From positions 2,046,968 to 2,110,967 of the forward strand of contig CAJFCJ010000009.1 in NCBI GenBank assembly GCA_904063045.1: a stretch of 64,000 bases of DNA. Reading direction: 5' to 3'. The stretch comes from Dimorphilus gyrociliatus (Eukaryota; Animalia; Annelida). Under the pieces are notes generated by a model. It had not been told where the DNA came from and did no database searches. It saw nothing but the letters and a program-made list of their open reading frames with translations. The translations under genes were made by a program, and so were the position numbers. Shown here in pieces: positions 8,161-52,077 of the stretch (the first letter of the stretch is position 1; the number at the start of each line of letters is the position of its first letter).

Positions 8161-11100
8161 TAATAATCACTTTAACAAGTTAATATAGCTATACTAAACT
8201 GTTTTGGACAATCGTCACAAGGTACCTCGTAGCTATTACCCAATTGAGGATATCTCTTTTTACCTCTTCTACCATGTGGCTTTCCTGGTACTGGATTTCC
8301 TGCTTTATCTCTATAATCGTTTGTCTTATCACCATTGAAATCACCGCAGATGCCGCACATTCTAATTAAGTGAAATAGAGTATGATATGGGTTTAAAACA
8401 AAAATGTACATTAGTACTTATTCTTATAGTTTGGTGGAATATGGATTTGTGTATTTGTTCTACCATCAAAAGTGACAACGAGGCCAAAAGTTGTTTTTAC
8501 TACTGCATAACTTCTCCTTCCTCTCCTCTTTTTGTATATTTTCAAACCCTTTGCCCTATCTCTAAATGATCTAATTATTCTCCTGCCATTAACGATTATT
8601 TTCAATCCTTGATCTAGTCTTATCTTGTAACCAAAAACTTCAATATCAACATATTTTGTCCAAGACACATCTCTATTCCTTCTACCAGGATATTTCCAGT
8701 TTCTGGCAAAAACTTTAAAGTTTGGCAAGTTTTCTTGCTCCTCTTTTGGACAAGGTCTAGAGTTTTAACAATTTTATTTGAAATACAGGTCAAGGTGAAT
8801 ACTCGTATGCACTTACTCGGCCAAAGTATATTTACAAGTACCCATAAAGTCCAAACGAGCTCCATCAAATGTTTTATAGTGAGGATCACCAGAAGCTTGA
8901 CACCACGCAGCCTTTTCGCATTTCTTAACTCCCTTGTCGTTTATTAAAGTGAAACCAGGATAGCACACGCAGAAATATCGGCCAGGTTTATTAATGCATT
9001 TCATATTTGCACCGCAAGGTTTGCTTAGACATTCATTAATATCTGTAAAAGATGTTTAATAATTAATACTCTTTGTTTATGCTCATTTACTTTTATCTTC
9101 TTAAATAAAGTTTAACCTTCGCAAGGACCATTTGGTAAGACTTTTCTTTTATATCCAGGGTCGCAAGGTATGACTAATTTTAAAAAATTTTAGTGCAGAA
9201 TTAGTATATTTAGTAACAATAGCATCAAATTTTATGTAAAAACCTTCGGTACAAATGATACCATCTCCAGTGTAACCAGCATTACAAGTACATTCATAAG
9301 TACCAACTTTATCTCTGCATGTTGCCTTTTCATGACATTTATTCAAATCATCGTTAGCGCATTCATCAATATCTAAATAAAATATTTTTATATACTAAAT
9401 AGTTAATTGGTCTTTACTTATGTATCAACTTACTTGTGCATTTTCCAGCGATCATTTCATAGCCTTTTGGACAGTGGCATCCTCTAACTCCATCTTTGAT
9501 TTTGCAAATAGCCAATGATGGGCAAGCTGGTAGTGAAGTCTTGCTAAATTTTCCATTGGCTTGACATACATATTTGTATTTACAATCATTTGTAATATAT
9601 CCATCACCGACCTAAAAATATATGAAAATGCTAGTTTTAGAATTACCCTGAAAAGGTATTCCTTACGGAAAAGTATCTATCATCAGGAGCCGTACAACCG
9701 CATTGATCCTCTTTAACACATTTATCACCGCTGAGAACATAGCCTGTATTACATTGACATCCTTCCACAGGTTCAGCATCGCAATTATCAGGATTATCGT
9801 CTGGGTTTGCGCAAGTAAGAGGACAGCTTGATGAGGTTGGTGAATATGAGCTATTTGGTCCGCATGGTAATGCTTTAAAACGAATAAATTCAAATTTTTA
9901 GGAAATCTTTCAAGCGGAAGAATAAAGTATAATTACGGCAGAAATTGGCTCTTCTCCATAGAACATTTTTTCCTGCTTGTTGTTCGCAGAGAACCGCTAA
10001 TGTTTCTAATGCTTTGCAGAGCATATCATCGGTTTTAGCCAAGCATAAATCGTACGTGCACTCTTCGTAAAGCTTTTTACAAGTAATATTAATAAGGCTT
10101 TAATTCAATTTTCTACAAGAAATACTTACATCATTAACTAGGGATGGATCTTGACTATTCAATATATTGATACAATCTTTGAAAGGTCCTTGAACATTCT
10201 TAATAATACCACATTTGTTGTTTCCTGAAATTTCTGCCATTTCATCTTCATCACAGTTTGGCTGAGGATCATCTGGTTTTTTACAAGCAGCTTCTCCATA
10301 CTGATCTGGTACTTCCCAACTATTTCCAATCTTTGAATATCTTCTCCTTGTAATTTTACGTCCTCTTCTATCAAAAGTAACAATGTCTGGTACTACGATA
10401 TTTCCATTGGAATCAGAGTAATCATCATTTCTGTTTCCATTGTAATTACCACATAAACCGCACATACCACTGAAATTAGTCATTGCCTTAATAAGTTAAA
10501 TGAATTTCTCTCAAAGTTATAACTTACATATTTTTATAAATATCTGGTATTTTAACATAAACTGACGATCTACCATCGAAACTCACTTGAAGACCGAAGG
10601 TTGTTGTAAGTTTAACAAATCGACCACTGAACTTTATTAAAAGACCAGGTGCTCCTGCCAATGCTTTTATTGGTAAATTATAGGCCTTTGGATTTTCCTG
10701 TTTCATATTTTGTTTGTGTGTTTTAATTTATTAAAGTTAGATGCAAAATAATAAAAACTTACAGCAACAAAGCCGGTATCTATCTTCTTTAAAGTAGAAA
10801 TGATAACCTTTCGTTTTTGATCCAATTTAATTTCATAACCGTAAACTTGAACGACAACGTATTTTGTGTATGAAACGGTTGTCTTTCTTCCTCTATGCTC
10901 ATTCTTTACTTCAACGTTAAACATTGGAACGCTAACTTTTTCGGATTTGGGGCAAGGTTTAACCAATGTATAGCGGCAAATACCCATAAAATCGATTTTA
11001 GCTCCATCAAAAGTCTTGTAATGGGGATCTCCCGAACCCTTACACCATGCAGATCTTGAACATGATAATTTACCATTAATTAATCTTTTTTGATAACCTC

Positions 11101-14100
11101 TTCTACATCTACATGTAAAACCACCAATTCTATTGATACAGTAAGAATTTGGAGGGCAGTCATCAGTTTTTAATTGACATTCGTTGACGTCTTTGCAAAC
11201 TTTAGCTCCGTTTTCCATTCTGAATCCATCATTACATTCACATTTATAAGAGCCTATAATATTGACACATTTATGTGGGCAGACACTTGGAGTTTGCTTG
11301 CATTCATCTACGTCTTCGCATTTATTGTCCTTGTTGACGAATCCTTTACGACATATGCAATCATATCCCCCAACCTTATTTTTACATTCAGCCTCTGGAG
11401 GACAAACCGCAGCTATTTGATCATCATCGCTCGATACAGTTTTACATTCATTGATATCCTCGCAATAAGTCTGACCATCTCCTGCATAACCAGATTTGCA
11501 TTTACATTTTCTTTCCCCATCTTCAATACCACATTCTGCCAAAGTATGACAAACAACTTGATCTTCTTTGATCTCACCTCCTTGAGAACAGGTGTACTTT
11601 GTGCCACATTGACTGTCACCCCAAGTTTCTCCAAGCTGTTTATACATACCATCTGCGGTCATGCAACCACATTCCGTTTCTGGCACACAGTCTGTTCCTG
11701 ATTGAACGAAACCAGGATTACAAACACAACCATCGCTAGGTGCAACTGTACAAGTTTTAGGAGCTTCAGGATCTTGACATGTTGATGGACAGGCTGGTGC
11801 GTTAGCTTCATAATGCATGTTTGGTCCACAAGGTAGAGCTATTTACATGAAAAAAAGTATAGAAGGAACATTAAACTTTAAGAACATATTTAAAGAGTTT
11901 TAAAAGTAAACTTACGGCAGAATGTTGCTGTTCTCCAACTGACTTCGATACCATTAGCTTTGCAAGAGTCAGCATAACTTTGAAGAGATTGACACAAATC
12001 AGTTATTTTTCCCTGTGCAGCGCAAACATCCATCTTACAACTTTCGAAATGATCAGTAATAGGCGTACTGGCATGGCATGCTTTAAAAGCTTCCATATTT
12101 TTTAGGCGACCACAAAAGTTATTTCCTTCGTATTCAGCCATTTCGGCAGTTGTACAGGAAACGTCATCATCATCCTCAGGTTTCAAGCATCTATAATTTG
12201 AATTTATATTCGAAAATTTTTAGTTTAAAGCATTCAAATTAAACTTATTAACTCACTGTTCATTGGCTGAATTGGTTGTATCGTCTGGTACTTCCCAACT
12301 GTTACCAATTTCAAAATATGGTTTCTTAACTGACAATCCCTTAGGATAATAATCATCTCTTGCCTTTTGGAAAAAATGGACAAATTAAAATCATTTACAT
12401 ATGTATTAACTCTATATTGTTAATTATTAATTATCTTTAGCTTACGTTTCCATTCCAGTTTCCACAAAGACCGCACATTTTGTTCTGATATTGAGCTGGT
12501 AGTTTAACAACAGCCATATGGTTTCTCTCAAAGCTAACTTGAAGACCGAAATCGGTTGATACAACCAAACGATAACCGCATTGGAGTACAACCTTCAATT
12601 TGCCGTCTAAGTATTCAACAGTGGGATTAACTCTAATTCCATTGACGAGAACAACACGATTTTTCATTAGGCGAATAGTGTAGCCATACACTTTTACATC
12701 AACAATTTTAGTATGAGCAACTTTTTTACTGCTTCTGTGCTCGTTTTTAACTTCGACATCGAATTTTGGCAAAGTTCCTACTTTGTCAGTGCAAGGTTTG
12801 GCAAGTGTATATTTACATGTTCCTTGGAAATGGATCATAGCTTTGTCAAAAGTTCTATAATGGGGATCTCCCGAAGCTCTACATTCTCCGGCAACTGTAA
12901 GTTTGTTAATAATTTAATAAAAGTTATCCGTTGTTTATTCACTTATCCCTACTTCCGCATGAAAGAACGCCTCCAATGATCTTTGGTGTTCGTCCTCCTT
13001 GACAAACACATCTGGAACCACCTCTATCGTCAATACATCTTGCTCCACTACCACATTTAAGCTTACCAGTTTTACCTAATCAAAATTATCATTTAAGTCT
13101 ATTATGATGTCATTAATAAATATTTAATACAAACAATCAGTGCTACGGATATAGTCAACTCTAGCTTCGCAAACATAGCGAACACGTGTACCACAATCTA
13201 TACTCTCCCACTCTCCAGCATCGTTCCCGACAGATAGGAAAGCAGCGCAAGCTTTTGATAAAACGGTCTCTGCCTCCTCAGACGACCTAAGCCAGTTTTT
13301 GTAAGACTGAAAAATGGATTTTTTTACAAAGTTAAAGCTATTCTCTGATTATTAGATCAATTTAGTTCTTACTCCGTATTTAGTTCCGTCAAACCATCTC
13401 CATTGATTTCCTGATGACTGAGAAGAAGTTCCCCAGCCCCAGCCCCATCCCCAACCATGCCATCCTCCTGTGTTTCCAGACGAGGAACCAGTTTTCTTAA
13501 GACCAATCCATGCTTTTGAACTAACTGTTGCTTCTTGTCTAACAAAGAAAAAATTACTCGAATGAATATACTGTATTTACTATGAGATGAAATGTACTTA
13601 CAATATTTTTTGGACAAAATTTGATTCATCACTATTGCTAATACTTGCCAATGTTCCACCAGCAGCTTTACAAAGTTCATTAGCATCGCTTTGAGATTTA
13701 GTATCAGTGGAAACTCTGTAACATTTACCACCGTATGTCTTCCATCCAGTTGGGCAATCGACTGAAATTTTTCATTAGGTAAGATTGAATGAAAGTAAAT
13801 ATATTTAATATATCAACATACTATCAATTCGATAATCGTTACGTCCTCTGTATTCGCAAACAAAACCTCTCTTGTCAGAACATCGGCCGATATTCCATTT
13901 ATGATTAGAACTTGTTGCGTAACCGCAGTCCAACGTGTTACTTCTACTTGGCTATTAAGATAAGGTGTATGATTGAACACGTACATATTTCATAATAGAA
14001 TGAATTTATTATATACTTGATTAGTATTCCAGTATGTTCTTCCTGAAACAGTTCTCTTTTGACATCCAAGTATCCATTCAAATCTACCTTCCTTATATCT

Positions 14101-45934: not shown

Positions 45935-48496
45935 ATGACACCGCAACAGTATTTAGGTACATTTCAATGATTGTAACAAAAAATCCAAGCTCTTTTAACA
46001 TCATTTCACGTCCATTTTCAATTGAGTTTTGTTTACACAGAGAAACATTTCATAAATGTCTATTTGGAGGACGCGGTCACTCAGCTTCTTGAGCATAAAG
46101 ATGAAACTCAAAAAGTAAATGTTTACAACTTTATGGCTGATTAGTTAGTATAATAATTCATTATAGTACAAGCACGTTTTAATATAAAAAACATTCTACT
46201 ACAGTTTTCAGAGTGTAAAGAATGGTAAACACACGCTATTTCGTTCTTATTCATACGTTAGTGCGACTCCTCATAATCGCGCTAGTATGGTTCAAACATT
46301 TGGCTCTTGGTTGAGAAGGGTAGCAACAAACGGTGAATTATTGAGCATTGCTGAATATCATTCTTTGCTGAAATTAATATGTCCGGACTTCCCACTGTCA
46401 ATCGTTAAGAAAGCAGCAAGGTTTTTCTATAAACCCTAATCCGAACTTAATCACTATTTATCTTCGCAATTTCCTCTATACAGAATTGTTTTAATGGACG
46501 ACGCCACTGATTGTTCTATGTCGTTTACAGACTTTTTATATGCGTTCCAATTACAATTTGTCTACGACGGTATAGGCATAAATTATATTTTAATGATGTT
46601 TGCCTAAACAATATTTTCAAATAGAATTCTTAACGACTACTAAAGATATATTCCTCGGTTTTCACGACAAAGGCAGACGAAATAGTACGGGAAGTATAAC
46701 CTCGAGGCCTGTTGTCGTTCCAACATCTGAAACGGAGAAAAGCGAAGAGGATACTAAACCCCAAGAATCAACTTCTCTAAATCTTCCAATAGATAGCTCA
46801 TCATTTCTATCAACGTTGCTTTCAGTAGTTGAAAAGTATATGAATGATAAGTTAGTAAAAAAAAGAACGTATACGCTATATATCTGTATTTAAAAAATAA
46901 CGTAAAAAAAATCCCAGATAAATTAAGTAAAGATGCTTCTCTTTTCCTTTTCTTTAGTACTTTCTCTGTAGAGCGTATACCACCGATATCGGTTCTGGAG
47001 AAGATACTGAAAAATTCCGAAAAGATAACCTATTATGAATTTTTATTAGCACTCACAAAATCGGATGATCTCAATAAGTCAATAGGTAGATTGCTTCCAA
47101 GAATGGAATTTGCAAAAATCCATAATTTAGCAGGAACTGAAACAGAAGTTGTAAGGTAAGATTTGTTCAGTAATACTGTATATAAAAATTTTCCTATTTA
47201 TATATTTTCAATCAATTTATTTTAATTAAAATGTAATGAAACGTTTCTATACGTACTATTAAACAACTTAAGATGATAATAAACTATTGCAGTCACGTTT
47301 TTTCTACTGAAAATCACATGACTTTTTTTTTTCTATCAAAAACTTAGAGCTATATTACAAAACTATTTTGATTTTAATGGATTTATACTTAAGGCCTCTC
47401 CCACATCTCCTTTTTCTCTTTCTTTCACTCACTCACTCTCTCCTCTCTCTCTCTCTTTGTCACTTTTACCCCTGCACTACAATCTCCATATCCTCTTAAT
47501 TATACAATAATTGTTATCTAGTCTTTTTTCCACTGTCCTATTATCTTGCATGTCTTTTCCCTACTTTTAAAATATATTTATAACAATATGAAATATATTT
47601 TATAAAACTAACCAAACAAAATAACAAACAAAAAACAAATGCAAATGCACTGTAGTGCTCCGGCATACCATTTGTACTGTACACATGGAAAAATCACGGA
47701 TCAACACCAATCGCCTTCTGTAAGTCATAAGCACGTTATATTTACCTCTTTCAACAGATTTATTATGCATATATATTCATTATATTCATATATATTAAAA
47801 AAAACTACTCCTTCAAGTTTTAATATCACTCTATAGTTAATTATAATCATGATTGTTTTAATTGAATTTCTTCTCTTCTAAATTCAGCAATTCGATTATT
47901 TTATAATCACACTATTTTCTATTCAGCATGAAAAAGCAAAATGAAAAAAAAGATGATTTCTTTTGCTGCATACAAAAAGTATTGATTTGCATAAAAAATT
48001 AAGCGATATAACCACTTATTTATCTTTTTATAATTTCTAATTAAGATAAGAATTATAATAGCTTTGTCACAATAGTTTGATTTTTCCCTTGATCCATATC
48101 ACACATTCTCCCTTGCCTCCCTCCTCCCCCTCCCTCTCTCTCTCTGTCTCTCTCTCATTCTCTATTCATTGAACCAGGCAGTATATTCCTCTTTTATATA
48201 GCTTTTTTTGCAACAGATGATAAACAATAGATACCAAGTAATTCTTTTATCAAAACACCCTTTTGTATTTAAAGAGGTATGTAACAGCTTCCTTTTCTCT
48301 CTTTCTTTTGAACAGCTCGAGGCAAGCAGAAGCGACACAACATCAAACAACTGAAGTTAATGACGAATTACGTAATCCTACTCAAGCAAAGAGCGTAATA
48401 ACTGGACCAAGGAGGCGTTCAAGAATACAAGTCCACCAAGACAGCGATGATGAAAGCATTAGTTGTGGTAGTACTAATAGTTCTGCTTCAACGTAG
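45935..48496 (+). CDS. CSTPP1: Centriolar satellite-associated tubulin polyglutamylase complex regulator 1 (C11orf49/UPF0705)
   Basis: YLEDAVTQLLEH, YFQSVKNGKHTLFR, ATPHNRAS, EYHSLLKLICPDFP and IVLMDDATDCSMSFTDFLYAFQLQF match C11orf49. The last exon 48316-48496 joins in phase 2 through a 1.16-kb intron; if unspliced, the ORF stops at 47159. Confidence 0.85.
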
Positions 48497-48871
48497 AGTG
48501 CACTTAAATAAGATTAGAAATCAAACATAGACTTGCACAGTTTTATATAAATATTAAGTCACTTTTTATTTTAAAAGTAATAACTATGTAAATAAAATTC
48601 ATTGACCGAAAAATTTGATCGATATTCCCTAAGTAAATGGATCTTTATTAACAGTTGAATTTCGCGCGCTTTTCTATTCCATTCATACGACTATAGTGAC
48701 ATCTATATGTAGACACTAACGCAATTGAAAATGGCTTCGAAAAGATTAATTGTTCTAATGTTTTCGATAAAAATTCGCCGATTTTGATCAAATGACTAGT
48801 CCGGGTAAACATTAAATATATATTTATACGTAATCACTTTAAAGGCAACACCAAACAGACACTGAAAAATC

Positions 48872-50560
48872 ATGTTAGAGTCGCTTAGAGGATATCTATA
48901 TGCAGCAACTGCTCCTATTCGACTAGTTTTTACTATTATAATCACCGTTTGCAGAACAATTAATACAGGAATTATTAACTTTCTTCACTTGCTTATTAAA
49001 ATATATAAAAGAATACTATCTTTCTTCCAAGCCATACGGGATACTATTAAACGTACAAAGAATGGAATAAAATCTTCATTTTGGTCAAATATTGACAGAC
49101 TGAAGAGAACATATTACTGGATATTATCATTAAGAAGACGATCTTTAGAATTAATTTGTCAAATTAGAATAGATCTGCTGAAATTTATTCAAAATGTTAA
49201 ATTCAAAGCTAAGAAAAGTGTTCAAAGCTACAGAAAACGTATAAAGGCATGGGGATTTCAATTGAAAGACAGTTCAGTACATGTCTGTAAAGATAATTAC
49301 AAGAAATTTATGAATCTGAGTCGGCTAAATCGGTTGATGTTACTTTTCCTCCTTTCTGGAATTATGGTCTTTGTTATATTAGTTATTATAATATTATATG
49401 ATATTCACACCGATAACCTTCAAGGTGCTGCCAGTAAATGGAGAAATTTTATCAAATTACTAAAAGCTTGTAGATTTTACTTAAAAAGCGCTGCTCTATT
49501 TATACTACATCATAGTTGGATGACATTAATACTATTGATAAAGCTATCATGGTTGACCTTAAGCACCCTTTTAGTTCTATTATATAACATATTTTGTTGG
49601 TTATTCGCTAATTTAGTTAACTGCTCAAAATTTCTCGCAAAAGCTCTGCAAAATCTCTGTTTCGATTTCTACGAACATGGAACAGTAGCTTTATTTCGAG
49701 CGGCTATTTCTACTTTCTACTTTACTAAGGATTTTACATGGGAACTACTTCAGGCGACAGGGCGAAAGAGTATTGATATTTTAAAGGGAACTTCCAAGTT
49801 TTTATCTATTTCCTATGATTTCACTGTTAGTACTACAAAAACAGTCGCGGATGCTACTAACCAAGTTTCACAAACCACATGGATTTGGAGTAAAGTTACT
49901 TTTCAATGGATTAAATGGTTTATTATACAAGTTACAACTTTTATCGTCTATTTTTTTAATGAATGGGCGTTCGATTGGATAAAATTTAGTCTTTTAAGTC
50001 TATATAAAATGATTTACGCATCTCTACATATAGTCTATAAGTTTATGAACCAGTTTTTTATTTCAACCTGTAATTTTACAACTTCTTTCATAAGTCATAT
50101 ATACAATGGAACTTACCTAATGGTATCATTTGTTGTAAATTTCTTTACCGGATTTACTGGAGCTACCAGAGGCATTGCAAATGGTCTAGTCTTTGTAATT
50201 AGAGGAATTTTTTCAACAATAGTTTTTGGTATGGAAAGTACCGTTGGAGTTTACACATCAACTATGTCAAAGTACAACAATATCAGAGAATTGATTTTTA
50301 TATTTGCCATTTCTCTCTTTTGCGTTTATTGCTCATCGCTAGCGTATGATAGACAACAAAGTAAGAGCAAAGAGGAGGAGGAGGAGGAAAGTGACGATGA
50401 AACCCTTGAAAAATTATATCCAGTGGCAAAATCTAAGCTAATGCCAACCTATGATAATCCTATGTTAGACGAATCCGATACGGATAGTGAAATAGGTTTT
50501 AAGGATGAAGTCGTCCCAGACATAAATACAGAGACTAATTCAACAGACGAGGAGTTATAA
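48872..50560 (+). CDS. 562-aa single-exon orphan membrane protein with long 11-residue-periodic amphipathic helices and an acidic C-tail
   Basis: A 1689-bp ORF in a ~70% AT background. Strong hydrophobic segments at aa ~155-176 and ~473-492; acidic tail EEEEESDDE...DESDTDSE...STDEEL. No family recognised. Confidence 0.8.
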   Translation: MLESLRGYLYAATAPIRLVFTIIITVCRTINTGIINFLHLLIKIYKRILSFFQAIRDTIKRTKNGIKSSFWSNIDRLKRTYYWILSLRRRSLELICQIRIDLLKFIQNVKFKAKKSVQSYRKRIKAWGFQLKDSSVHVCKDNYKKFMNLSRLNRLMLLFLLSGIMVFVILVIIILYDIHTDNLQGAASKWRNFIKLLKACRFYLKSAALFILHHSWMTLILLIKLSWLTLSTLLVLLYNIFCWLFANLVNCSKFLAKALQNLCFDFYEHGTVALFRAAISTFYFTKDFTWELLQATGRKSIDILKGTSKFLSISYDFTVSTTKTVADATNQVSQTTWIWSKVTFQWIKWFIIQVTTFIVYFFNEWAFDWIKFSLLSLYKMIYASLHIVYKFMNQFFISTCNFTTSFISHIYNGTYLMVSFVVNFFTGFTGATRGIANGLVFVIRGIFSTIVFGMESTVGVYTSTMSKYNNIRELIFIFAISLFCVYCSSLAYDRQQSKSKEEEEEESDDETLEKLYPVAKSKLMPTYDNPMLDESDTDSEIGFKDEVVPDINTETNSTDEEL

Positions 50561-50812
50561 TCTCATTTCTCTTATATCTCTTTTTTGTCTCATCAGACTG
50601 GTGCTGTGTAAAAACTATTGTCAGCTTTTCTCTTTAAATATACATAAACAAACCTACGTTATTGAATATGTTGCGTTTCTTTGCGTATTTGAATTTCGCG
50701 CCATAACAGGCGTGACTCTATTGCATAGTGAGTTTTCATTATTGCGCTATATTTCCGCTTCCGCTCTTGTGTTGTGAACTCCTTCGAGAAATTCTCTGAT
50801 TGCAGTGGCAAC

Positions 50813-52077
50813 ATGGAAGATTTGTTGCAAATACCATCCCCCGGGAGCTTTCCAGACTTAACGTCTTACATGAATGTCGACTTCGATGTTGATGATGCTC
50901 TTCTGGGCAGTAGTGAAGTAACAACAACAGAGCCGAATTCTACGTCGCAAACCAATTGTCAAGTATGCGGGGATGAGGCTTCGGGTAATCACTACGGCGT
51001 ACAATCGTGTGAGGGTTGTAAAGGTTTCTTTAGAAGAAGTATTCAAAAATTAATGAAATATCAGTGTAGTAAGGAGGGTAAATGCGAAATATCTAAAGTC
51101 AATAGGAATCGATGCCAATATTGTCGATTTAAAAAATGTTTAGCAGTGGGGATGAGTCGCGATTCAGTAAGGTGAGTTTCATAGAATTTAAAAAAGTCTT
51201 TTAAAGAAAAAAAATTTCACGACTCACTGACTACAGATACGGAAGAATGTCGAAAAGAACGAAAACTGTGAATGACAAGCAACAGAAAGCCATTGTTAAT
51301 GATCAAACGAAAACGCAAGAAGAGTTGGCTGTATACGATCTCATATTGGCCGTTTCGTCAGCTTATACAGAACACATGTTGATTGCTGAAAATAAAATTC
51401 CGAAGACAGAGACTGTTATTCCACCTGCAGGGGATTTAATCGATTTGTTGGATTTAACGAAGAAAGTGTCTTCATTCGAACGGCTAACAAAATTGATTGG
51501 CTTAAGCTTGAATTCAGTTGCCGAATTCTTAAAATGTATACCGGGATTTTACAATTTGAGTACCAACGACCAGTTGGCCTTACTCAAAGGAGGTTTCCTA
51601 GAGATATGGATAATATCGATTAGCCGTACATTTGATACCAATGCGAATACCTTAACCGTACAAGATGGAAATCAAATAAGTAAAGATGATTTGGAATCGG
51701 CTTACAATACTGACCTCGTGTCTTGCCTCTTTAACTTTGTTGAAAATTTCATGAATTTAAACTTATCAAATACTGATTTAGCTCTGTTCTGTGCTGTGGT
51801 CTTTTTTACACCCGATCGAATTAATGTAATTGATAAAAGCGGTGTATCGGTTTTACAGGGAAAATTAATGGAGGCATTAAAAATGCACATGAGCAGAAAT
51901 CATTCGACAGAACCCCAACTATTTGCCTCTGTTCTCTTGAAAATACCTGAACTAAGAATTCTCAGCGCGAAACACAATGACGCTCTAGAATACTTTAAGG
52001 AAAGAGACCAATTGTTATACACCGATGCAATGTTCGCTGAGATCTTTAATATGCATCCAGTCTTGCATTCAGAATGA
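50813..52077 (+). CDS. Nuclear receptor, NR1 E78-like
   Basis: [29 protein letters not shown]...[13 protein letters not shown]; T-box [11 protein letters not shown] (intron 51172-51236); LBD signature [17 protein letters not shown]; AF-2-like MFAEIFN. SVRYGR plus an AF-2 favours E78 over E75/Rev-erb. An additional 5' exon is possible. Confidence 0.85.

What the first reader, a model, noticed from the sequence alone, without database searches (positions are those of the whole stretch)
48872..50560. Orphan membrane protein built from long 11-residue (hendecad) amphipathic repeats, resembling a membrane ruler or lipid-droplet coat
Residues ~368-466 (nt ~49973-50269) fall into register every 11 aa: DWIKFSLLSLY/KMIYASLHIVY/KFMNQFFISTC/NFTTSFISHIY/NGTYLMVSFVV/NFFTGFTGATR/GIANGLVFVIR/GIFSTIVFGME/STVGVYTSTMS. 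A basic arm at aa ~31-140 shows a weaker 11-mer register (NTGIINFLHLL/IKIYKRILSFF/QAIRDTIKRTK/NGIKSSFWSNI/DRLKRTYYWIL). Two true TM-like helices (aa ~155-176 and ~473-492) and an acidic tail complete it. Known: 11/3 helices characterise perilipins, alpha-synuclein, apolipoproteins and phage tape-measure proteins. Inference: a membrane-anchored protein laying hundreds of residues of amphipathic helix on a lipid surface (lipid droplet, ER or yolk), possibly with an acidic contact-site tail.
Basis: partly seen in the sequence, partly recalled or inferred. Interest (0 to 1): 0.7.

Follow-up and report, generated by a model that had tools for sequence, protein, structure and literature searches.

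The report
Giant 11-residue-periodic membrane helix protein
This worm gene is real and belongs to an undescribed, intron-free protein family built around a proline-free helix of 400-870 residues that keeps one 11-residue register, like the fat-droplet coat protein perilipin 4 but anchored in a membrane; what it does is untested.

Summary
The 562-aa ORF (48872-50560, +) has a hydropathy period of 3.65-3.67 residues. One phase is kept from aa 78 to 470 (coherence R 0.82; shuffles reach 0.73 at most; other ORFs of the window give 0.05-0.26). There is no proline between aa 16 and 516, and lag-11 autocorrelation has z 6.2.

The ORF is a conserved gene. A syntenic orthologue is 65% identical, with pN/pS 0.30.

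"Orphan" is wrong. An exhaustive profile search found about 20 relatives (E down to 1e-19), and hhalign gives 99.9% probability, collinear over 455 columns. Only one relative is named, a hypothetical protein of the annelid Paralvinella palmiformis. None has a Pfam domain.

Canonical members have:
- an MGxxxS start and overt 11-mers of synuclein/perilipin-4 chemistry;
- a transmembrane helix, then a second 11-mer array;
- a conserved KYNMYRE-plus-transmembrane module;
- an acidic tail with PPxY.

All peak at exactly 3.67 over 370-870 residues. The Dimorphilus copy is shortened, more hydrophobic, and lacks the MG start and PPxY.

Lying on a lipid surface is plausible but untested. Lipid droplet, ER or yolk is a guess.

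The parts
48872..50560 (+). Single-exon coding sequence, 562 aa plus stop
   Evidence: The orthologous 561-codon ORF lies in the syntenic locus L001 at 9890-11575. pN 0.198, pS 0.666; codon-position identity 0.74/0.84/0.53.
48872..49321 (+). N-terminal basic amphipathic arm (aa 1-150). Net charge +24 over aa 8-150 (+26 over aa 1-154). No MG start.
   Evidence: Aligns to the overt 11-mer arm of the relatives. The hydrophobic face covers 5 of 11 sectors.
49325..49399 (+). TM-like helix 1 (aa 152-176), followed by YDIHTDNL, which corresponds to the family's DLYxGDY
   Evidence: Kyte-Doolittle 19-residue mean up to 3.38. Conserved position in the family.
49103..50281 (+). aa 78-470: 393 residues in one hendecad (11/3) register, proline-free
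   Evidence: R 0.82 at period 11/3 in both orthologues; nulls reach 0.73 at most.
49490..49627 (+). Very hydrophobic stretch aa 207-252. It takes the place of the Tyr/Trp/Gly-rich second 11-mer array of the relatives.
49670..49693 (+). YEHGTVAL motif (aa 267-274), matching the family's YAYEHGxxAL
49880..50269 (+). Conserved C-terminal hydrophobic module (aa 337-466).
   Evidence: This is the part that found the relatives. It has the highest AlphaFold2 confidence, pLDDT 77-85 at aa 380-430. The C-terminal half has dN/dS 0.078.
50270..50347 (+). KYNNIRE motif (aa 467-473) plus TM-like helix 2 (aa 474-492), ending VYCSSLAYDR
   Evidence: Y468, F476, Y486 and C487 are invariant; N469, R472, E473, D493 and R494 are nearly invariant, across 23 sequences. 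Kyte-Doolittle 2.16.
50348..50557 (+). Acidic tail (aa 493-562; net charge -16 over aa 494-562), predicted disordered. Motifs LYPV, MPTYDNPM and DSEIGFKDEVVPD.
   Evidence: These align to the family's PPxY, LPxYDD and acidic-Phe...VPD positions.
48657..48676 (+). Conserved E2F-like element (TTTCGCGC at 48660-48667), about 210 nt upstream of the ATG
   Evidence: The same element lies at the orthologous place in L001 (9678).
48721..48787 (+). A 25-nt block (48721-48745) that is 25/25 identical in the sister species. It contains the ATG (48731) of a short upstream ORF (MASKR...).
   Evidence: Whether it is a promoter or a 5'UTR element is not known.

Best explanation
Shown:
- The ORF is a real, fast-evolving, intron-free gene under purifying selection.
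- It is a shortened, compositionally drifted member of an undescribed protein family with one named member, from the annelid Paralvinella.
- The family hallmark is a proline-free, all-helical stretch of 370-870 residues whose hydrophobic pattern keeps a single 11/3 (hendecad, '3-11 helix') register. That register runs from the N-terminus, through a first TM-like segment, to a conserved KYNMYRE-plus-TM module. An acidic disordered tail follows.

Inferred:
- The N-terminal arm is cytosolic. In canonical members it starts with an N-myristoylation-type MGxxxS and has a narrow Val/Ile/Ala/Thr face flanked by Lys/Arg. It would lie flat on a membrane or lipid-monolayer surface, as alpha-synuclein, apolipoproteins and perilipin 4 do.
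- In the central region 7-9 of 11 helical sectors are apolar and all charges sit in one narrow stripe. It would be buried much more deeply in a lipid phase or in the membrane.
- The two TM-like helices fix the protein to one membrane.
- The tail offers docking motifs (PPxY/LPxY in canonical members, degenerate in Dimorphilus).

The protein would therefore act as a membrane-anchored coat or scaffold of a lipid surface, not as an enzyme or transporter. Which organelle it serves is unknown.
For: Gene reality:
- Syntenic orthologue with the same nuclear receptor and HlyIII neighbours.
- 65% amino-acid identity against 90-93% for the neighbouring genes. Third codon positions are the least conserved (0.53). 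pN/pS is 0.30 and Jukes-Cantor dN/dS is 0.14.

Family membership:
- 21 hits in the library of 1.84 billion proteins, E down to 9.5e-19.
- hhalign probability 99.93%, E 6.9e-36, collinear from aa 43 to 501.
- Shared motifs.

Register:
- R 0.82 at 11/3 in Dimorphilus.
- All 18 relatives tested (and the Dimorphilus protein itself, at 3.65) peak at 3.66-3.68, with best-period R of 0.53-0.89 over 17-39 windows.
- Proline-free runs of 450-890 residues in most members.
- Gap lengths in pairwise alignments peak at 4, 7, 11, 15, 18, 22, 26, 29 and 33.

Structure:
- AlphaFold2 predicts helices of 126, 98 and 210 residues with no compact fold (pTM 0.31).

Chemistry:
- Sector analysis of the helical faces.
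- N-arm composition in relatives: Thr/Lys/Val/Asn-rich, net +20 to +25, 5-7% aromatic.
- Weak profile matches to alpha-synuclein 8-88 and SHERP.
- Sub-threshold Pfam hits to Apolipoprotein, Perilipin, Synuclein and Phasin.

Precedent:
- Perilipin 4 has a 968-residue 3-11 helix made of 33-mers without indels, and it coats lipid droplets (PMC5889406).
Against: - There is no experimental or expression evidence.
- If both TM-like helices span the bilayer once, the central region is on the luminal or extracellular side, not on a cytosolic droplet.
- Some members have one or two further TM-grade segments just before KYNMYRE, so part of the 'helix' may cross the bilayer.
- A hendecad pattern suits a straight coiled coil equally well.
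- The matches to synuclein, apolipoprotein and perilipin are below significance and curated cut-offs. They probably reflect shared periodicity, not ancestry.
- AlphaFold2 confidence is moderate (mean pLDDT 63.9). Long single helices are its default output for such sequences.
- The peaks in gap length may partly be an aligner artefact, and the pairs are not independent.
Confidence: 0.55

Rival explanations
1. Membrane-anchored hendecad coiled coil. The 11/3 stripe is a helix-helix interface, and the protein forms a long, nearly straight homo-oligomeric rod. That rod would act as a spacer, tether or 'ruler' in the lumen or on the cell surface, rather than a helix lying on lipid.
For: - Period of exactly 3.67, and very long uninterrupted helices.
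- The predicted two-TM topology puts the central 300-450 residues on the non-cytosolic side (inference from the flanks seen).
- N-x-T sequons recur at one alignment column in several relatives (read).
Against: - The central region is apolar over 7-9 of 11 sectors, far wider than a coiled-coil core needs.
- The N-arm has the Lys-flanked, Thr-containing narrow face typical of lipid-binding class-A and synuclein helices.
- No oligomer modelling was done.
Confidence: 0.2
2. Ordinary polytopic membrane protein, such as a channel, transporter or scramblase-like bundle. The periodicity would only reflect lipid-facing against core-facing sides, together with an origin by 11-mer duplication.
For: - Several stretches of TM-grade hydrophobicity: aa 150-183, 207-252, 434-454 and 470-493.
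- Extra TM-grade segments before KYNMYRE in many relatives.
- Conserved Arg and Glu inside the C-terminal module.
Against: - No Pfam, PDB sequence or fold match to any transporter.
- One phase is kept over 370-870 residues, and prolines and loops are absent. Helical bundles do not show this; the control ORFs give R(11/3) of 0.05-0.26.
- The canonical N-arm and the second 11-mer array are too polar to span a membrane.
Confidence: 0.15
3. Chance ORF or decaying pseudogene in an AT-rich genome.
For: - It evolves about four times faster at non-synonymous sites than its neighbours.
- No expression data were obtained.
Against: - About 561 codons are open in two species with near-saturated synonymous sites.
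- dN/dS is 0.14, and 0.078 in the C-terminal half.
- Deep homologues carry invariant residues.
Confidence: 0.02

Closest known systems
Perilipin 4 giant amphipathic helix (human PLIN4 aa 70-1037; PMC5889406)
   Same: - Hundreds of residues in an unbroken 11/3 (3-11 helix) register without phase-breaking indels.
- The canonical N-arms of the family are Thr/Lys/Val-rich, net positive and almost free of aromatic residues, as in PLIN4.
   Different: - No PAT domain or 4-helix bundle, and no Pfam Perilipin match for the Dimorphilus protein. Two relatives give E 0.02, which is not significant.
- TM-anchored rather than soluble.
- The central part is far more hydrophobic (mean hydrophobicity +0.31, 16-20% aromatic).
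- No 33-mer sequence repeats in the Dimorphilus copy.
Alpha-synuclein N-terminal 11-mers, and SHERP
   Same: - 11-residue units with a narrow hydrophobic face, Thr within it, and Lys at the interface.
- The family profile aligns its N-arm to synuclein residues 8-88 (E 0.01-0.03) and to SHERP (E 0.007).
   Different: - The matches are not significant and concern the relatives' N-arm, not the Dimorphilus sequence itself.
- The length is 5-10 times greater.
- TM anchors and a conserved C-terminal module are present here.
Exchangeable apolipoproteins A-I/A-IV/E (Pfam PF01442)
   Same: Tandem 11/22-mer class-A amphipathic helices that wrap lipid. Four relatives give sub-threshold hits, the best at E 7.5e-7 (P0033 scored 28 bits).
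   Different: - The scores are far below the curated cut-off of 90 bits.
- Apolipoprotein repeats are punctuated by prolines, whereas this family is proline-free.
- Apolipoproteins are secreted and soluble, not TM-anchored.
Paralvinella palmiformis hypothetical protein LSH36_71g06006 (KAK2163985.1; P0012)
   Same: True homologue, collinear over N-arm, TM1, YEHG motif, C-terminal module, TM2 and acidic tail.
   Different: - It has 858 aa.
- It starts MGNILS, has overt 11-mers, a Tyr/Trp/Gly-rich second array and a longer middle region.
- It is uncharacterised as well.

Membership tests
Unnamed hendecad membrane-protein family (KAK2163985.1-like) | Conserved C-terminal module: KFFxDL, HIYN, KYNMYRE, a TM helix, then YCTGLxRDR | tested here: met
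   The Dimorphilus protein has KFMNQ, HIYNG, KYNNIRE, a TM helix at aa 474-492 and VYCSSLAYDR. The invariant residues F447, Y461, Y468, F476, Y486 and C487 are present. hmmsearch E down to 9.5e-19.
Unnamed hendecad membrane-protein family (KAK2163985.1-like) | Collinear full-length architecture: N-arm, TM1 with a DxYxGD-type flank, YAYEHGxxAL, C-terminal module, acidic tail | tested here: met
   hhalign of A1 against A4: probability 99.93%, E 6.9e-36, 455 columns, aa 43-501 matched to positions 49-682.
Unnamed hendecad membrane-protein family (KAK2163985.1-like) | Single 11/3 register over hundreds of proline-free residues | tested here: met
   R 0.82 over aa 78-470, with no proline between aa 16 and 516. 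The relatives give best-period R of 0.53-0.89 at 3.66-3.68.
Unnamed hendecad membrane-protein family (KAK2163985.1-like) | N-terminal MGxxxS (N-myristoylation-type start) | tested here: not met
   Thirteen relatives have it. The Dimorphilus protein and its orthologue start MLES.. with no Gly at position 2. This is a lineage-specific loss and does not exclude homology.
Unnamed hendecad membrane-protein family (KAK2163985.1-like) | PPxY, followed 8-9 residues later by [LM]PxY, in the tail | tested here: inconclusive
   PPxY occurs in 10 relatives and the paired [LM]PxY in 7. Dimorphilus has LYPV in place of PPxY, plus MPTY. The sister species has MPSI.
Unnamed hendecad membrane-protein family (KAK2163985.1-like) | Intron-free coding sequence | tested here: met
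   Uninterrupted ORFs are seen in the window, L001, L003 (3.9 kb), L004 and L005. L004 lies beside a many-exon clathrin heavy-chain gene.
Perilipin (Pfam PF03036) | PAT domain, 11-mer region and 4-helix bundle, recognised by the Pfam model at its gathering score | tested here: not met
   No Pfam hit at E<=0.1 for the Dimorphilus protein, nor at E<=1.
Synuclein (PF01387) / Apolipoprotein A1/A4/E (PF01442) | Match to the family model at the curated cut-off | tested here: not met
   No hit for the Dimorphilus protein. The relatives score 17-28 bits against cut-offs of 23.3 and 90.
Lipid-surface-binding 3-11 amphipathic helices (functional class, not a homology family) | Folds as a helix on, and binds to, a lipid bilayer or monolayer | not testable with these tools
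   Only the sequence signature could be tested: the periodicity and the Lys-flanked narrow face in the relatives.

The most novel reading that the evidence does not exclude
The family would be a second, independent class of 'giant' 3-11 helix proteins beside perilipin 4, and a membrane-anchored one. A single hendecad register is kept under selection for 400-870 residues, even across TM-like segments. That would mean the whole chain works as one continuous in-plane helix, up to about 60-130 nm long at 1.5 Angstrom per residue. Such a helix could coat, measure or shape a lipid surface in annelid cells.
Probability: 0.35. Interest if true: 0.75.

Novelty: new variant of a known kind. Interest (0 to 1): 0.6.

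Why it matters
Perilipin 4 has been treated as a unique extreme among lipid-binding amphipathic helices. Its authors state that its helix is an order of magnitude longer than other known targeting helices (PMC5889406).

An unrelated, intron-free family with helices of comparable length, but with TM anchors, a probable lipid-modified N-terminus and a much more hydrophobic core, would be a natural comparison for three questions:
- how helix length, face width and charge set organelle specificity;
- whether keeping the register is itself functional;
- how such proteins are inserted into membranes.

For genome annotation, the result turns an 'orphan' ORF into a member of a definable family that currently has no Pfam model and no name.

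Tried and rejected
- Pfam scan of the ORF: nothing.
- ESM Atlas by features, for the ORF and for the Paralvinella relative: no usable hit. The Atlas's own model of the ORF has pLDDT 0.51 and gave only TM<=0.32 rows.
- PDB sequence search with the two-sequence profile: only a designed TM protein at E 0.06.
- AlphaFold2 with two sequences: pLDDT 43, not usable.
- Foldseek against PDB with the better model: no hits. Atlas shape search: TM by query 0.24 or less; the one higher value, TM 0.55 by the target to a DivIVA-like helix over aa 1-120, only says 'long helix'.
- Word-index protein searches found few relatives even with a family alignment or with the conserved module of a canonical member. 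The taxonomic range of the family therefore stays unresolved. Cluster look-ups gave one organism name only.
- An upstream-exon model was rejected. The conserved ORF piece at 48290-48496 ends in a stop in both species after a splice-acceptor-like site, so it is most likely the last exon of the upstream gene. An in-frame stop lies three codons before the ATG, and the orthologue shares the MLES start.
- FFAT, LIR, dileucine and KDEL-type readings of the Dimorphilus tail were considered by eye and dropped, because no motif fits its consensus.
- Earlier notes of this scan were searched by words and by sequence for paralogues. Nothing usable was found.
Full report
**What is there.** The window is AT-rich animal DNA (GC about 0.28-0.39). 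An earlier follow-up note of this scan names the genome as the annelid Dimorphilus gyrociliatus; I did not verify that independently. The ORF 48872-50560 (+) encodes 562 aa and has no Pfam match. A two-exon nuclear hormone receptor gene (zf-C4 plus ligand-binding domain) starts about 250 nt downstream.

- Hydropathy spectra peak at 3.65 residues in aa 368-466, at 3.60 in aa 31-140 and at 3.65 for the whole protein. Each peak exceeds the 95th percentile of the maximum over shuffled sequences.
- Residue-similarity autocorrelation is strongest at lag 11 (z 6.2). The 3/4/7/8/18/22/29/33 series typical of an 11/3 helix is also present.
- The phase of the hydrophobic moment at period 11/3 stays within about 150-260 degrees from aa 78 to 470, in this protein and in its orthologue.
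- Phase coherence over 17 independent 22-residue windows is 0.82 at 11/3. It collapses to 0.25 at 3.64 and 0.06 at 3.60.
- Nulls that keep local amphipathicity but scramble the register reach 0.73 at most. Residue shuffles reach 0.72. Six other ORFs of the same window give 0.05-0.26 at 11/3.
- There is not one proline between residues 16 and 516.
- The two TM-like helices, the basic arm (net +26) and the acidic tail (net -16) are as described. A third very hydrophobic stretch (aa 207-252) was overlooked.
- In this protein the 11-residue pattern is one of residue type, not of repeated sequence.

**Is it a gene?** Yes.
- One close homologue exists (P0002). It lies in a collinear locus of an unnamed close relative, with the same nuclear receptor and HlyIII neighbours and 73-81% nucleotide identity. 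Its ORF extends upstream to the same MLES start.
- Amino-acid identity is 65%, against 90-93% for two neighbouring genes. Codon positions 1/2/3 are 0.74/0.84/0.53 identical. pN/pS is 0.30. Jukes-Cantor dN/dS is 0.14 overall and 0.078 in the C-terminal half.
- The gene is therefore fast-evolving but clearly constrained.
- Upstream, a conserved ORF piece that ends in a stop in both species after an acceptor-like site is most likely the last exon of the preceding gene. An E2F-like TTTCGCGC element and a 25-nt perfectly conserved block lie between it and the ATG.

**It is not an orphan.**
- An exhaustive hmmsearch of 1.84 billion representatives with the two-sequence profile gave 21 proteins at E<=1e-3, 11 of them at E<=1e-10. 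All matched the C-terminal half.
- Profile-profile comparison of the Dimorphilus pair against 18 relatives gives 99.93% probability and E 6.9e-36. It is collinear from aa 43 to 501.
- Only one relative carries a name: hypothetical protein LSH36_71g06006 of Paralvinella palmiformis. The rest come from unlabelled assemblies. One of those lies next to a many-exon clathrin heavy-chain gene, which indicates an intron-rich eukaryote.
- No relative has a Pfam domain above threshold.
- In every locus I fetched, the gene is an uninterrupted ORF.

**Family anatomy.** Canonical members have, in order:
- a start MG[AFIV]I[FL]S[KR]P, which fits the N-myristoylation consensus (my knowledge);
- 130-160 residues of overt 11-mers of the type DNTKNAIxTRV;
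- KLTRxQKxxY, a TM helix, then DLYxGDY;
- a second array of Tyr/Trp/Gly-rich 11-mers (EYxWxGxKVGx);
- YAYEHGxxALKEGS and YFxTNFRxAS;
- a long hydrophobic helical stretch;
- KFFxDL, HIYNVLYI and KYNMYRE, then a TM helix, then YCTGLxRDR;
- an acidic tail with PPxY (10 members), [LM]PxY 8-9 residues later (7 members), and an acidic-Phe...VPD motif.

All 18 relatives tested, and the Dimorphilus protein itself (3.65), have their spectral peak at 3.66-3.68 over 370-870 residues, with best-period coherence of 0.53-0.89. Most have proline-free runs of 450-890 residues. Gap lengths in pairwise alignments pile up at 4, 7, 11, 15, 18, 22, 26, 29 and 33, the phase-preserving lengths. For example, 131 gaps have length 11, against 24 of length 10 and 14 of length 12. 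The pairs are not independent and an aligner favours such gaps in periodic sequence, so I treat this as consistent with selection on register, not as proof.

**How the Dimorphilus copy differs.**
- It lacks the MG start.
- Its N-arm is more hydrophobic: Ile/Leu/Phe instead of Thr/Val/Ala, with 5 rather than 3 apolar sectors.
- The second array is replaced by a TM-grade hydrophobic stretch.
- The middle is about 180 residues shorter.
- PPxY is replaced by LYPV.
- The shift toward Phe/Ile/Leu/Lys/Asn fits the AT-rich genome. That last point is my inference.

**Structure.** AlphaFold2 with 23 sequences gives mean pLDDT 63.9 and pTM 0.31. It predicts helices 2-127, 134-147, 151-179, 183-280 and 286-495 and a disordered tail, which means very long helices with no compact fold. 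Fold searches find nothing meaningful.

**Chemistry of the helices.**
- In canonical N-arms the apolar face covers about 3 of 11 sectors. Lys/Arg flank it, and Asp/Glu plus Asn/Thr lie opposite. This is the class-A arrangement of apolipoproteins and synuclein (classification from my knowledge).
- In the central regions 7-9 of 11 sectors are apolar, and all charged residues fall in about 3 adjacent sectors.
- The family profile weakly aligns its N-arm to alpha-synuclein 8-88 and SHERP (E 0.007-0.03).
- Relatives give sub-threshold hits to Apolipoprotein A1/A4/E, Perilipin, Synuclein and Phasin.
- These are resemblances of periodic chemistry, not evidence of common descent.

**Mechanism.** I propose a membrane-anchored coat or scaffold.
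- The N-arm would lie on the cytosolic face of a bilayer or monolayer. It is myristoylated in canonical members and simply greasier in Dimorphilus.
- The central, mostly apolar helix would sit deep in a lipid phase.
- The TM helices would fix the protein, and the tail would recruit partners.

The register, helicity, chemistry and family membership are shown. Lipid binding, topology and organelle are inferred.

The main difficulty is topology. With two single spans the centre would be luminal or extracellular. That would favour the coiled-coil 'rod or ruler' rival, or binding to the outer leaflet. Extra TM-grade segments before KYNMYRE in many members leave room for a 4-span reading.

**Comparison with perilipin 4.** Perilipin 4 has a 968-residue 3-11 helix built of 29 33-mers without indels. 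It is described as exceeding other targeting helices by an order of magnitude, and it is weakly hydrophobic and net positive (PMC5889406). The present family matches it in length and register fidelity, and in the chemistry of the N-arm. It differs in having TM anchors, a very hydrophobic core, a conserved C-terminal module and no perilipin domains.

**Verdict.** The result is an undescribed family that is a new variant of the giant amphipathic-helix theme.

Noticed in passing
window 50694-50701 and 50813-52077: A nuclear hormone receptor gene (zf-C4 exon, then ligand-binding-domain exon) starts only about 250 nt after the target's stop codon. It has its own E2F-like TTTCGCGC about 115 nt before its ATG, and the sister species has TTTGGCGC at the same place. 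The two neighbouring genes share the motif TGAATTTCGCGC in their upstream regions.
   Followed up: partly
window 48721-48787: A 25-nt block, GCAATTGAAAATGGCTTCGAAAAGA, is identical in the sister species, although the surrounding non-coding DNA is only about 68% identical. It holds the ATG of a short upstream ORF: 18 codons here and 8 in the relative, both starting MASKR. It could be a core-promoter site (YY1-like AAAATGGC) or a translational control element.
   Followed up: no
window 48290-48496: A conserved reading frame follows an acceptor-like ...ttttgaacag and ends in a stop at the same place in both species. It is Ser/Asp-rich (..RRRSRIQVHQDSDDES..). It is probably the terminal exon of the upstream + strand gene, whose earlier conserved pieces lie at about 46188-47156.
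   Followed up: partly
L003 3001-6933 (protein P0003, tail): This relative carries a 670-residue tail with five copies of ...SDFFAGH.... This is an FFAT-like (two phenylalanines in an acidic tract) sequence that could bind VAP proteins at ER contact sites. It is absent from the Dimorphilus copy.
   Followed up: no
L004 1-9000: In an unlabelled JGI metagenome contig, the 959-aa family member is a single 2.9-kb exon. It lies directly beside a clathrin heavy-chain gene that is split into many small exons. The family therefore looks intron-free even in intron-rich genomes, which could mean a retrogene origin or selection against introns.
   Followed up: partly
alignment A2, block 601-700 (relatives): An N-x-T sequon of the form N[KSG]TY[HY]GS recurs at one column in six relatives. 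Dimorphilus and its sister share NFT (N401) and NGT (N412). If these sites are glycosylated, the central region is luminal or extracellular.
   Followed up: no
It might be a second, more canonical relative, or it might be unrelated. I could not read that sequence.
   Followed up: no
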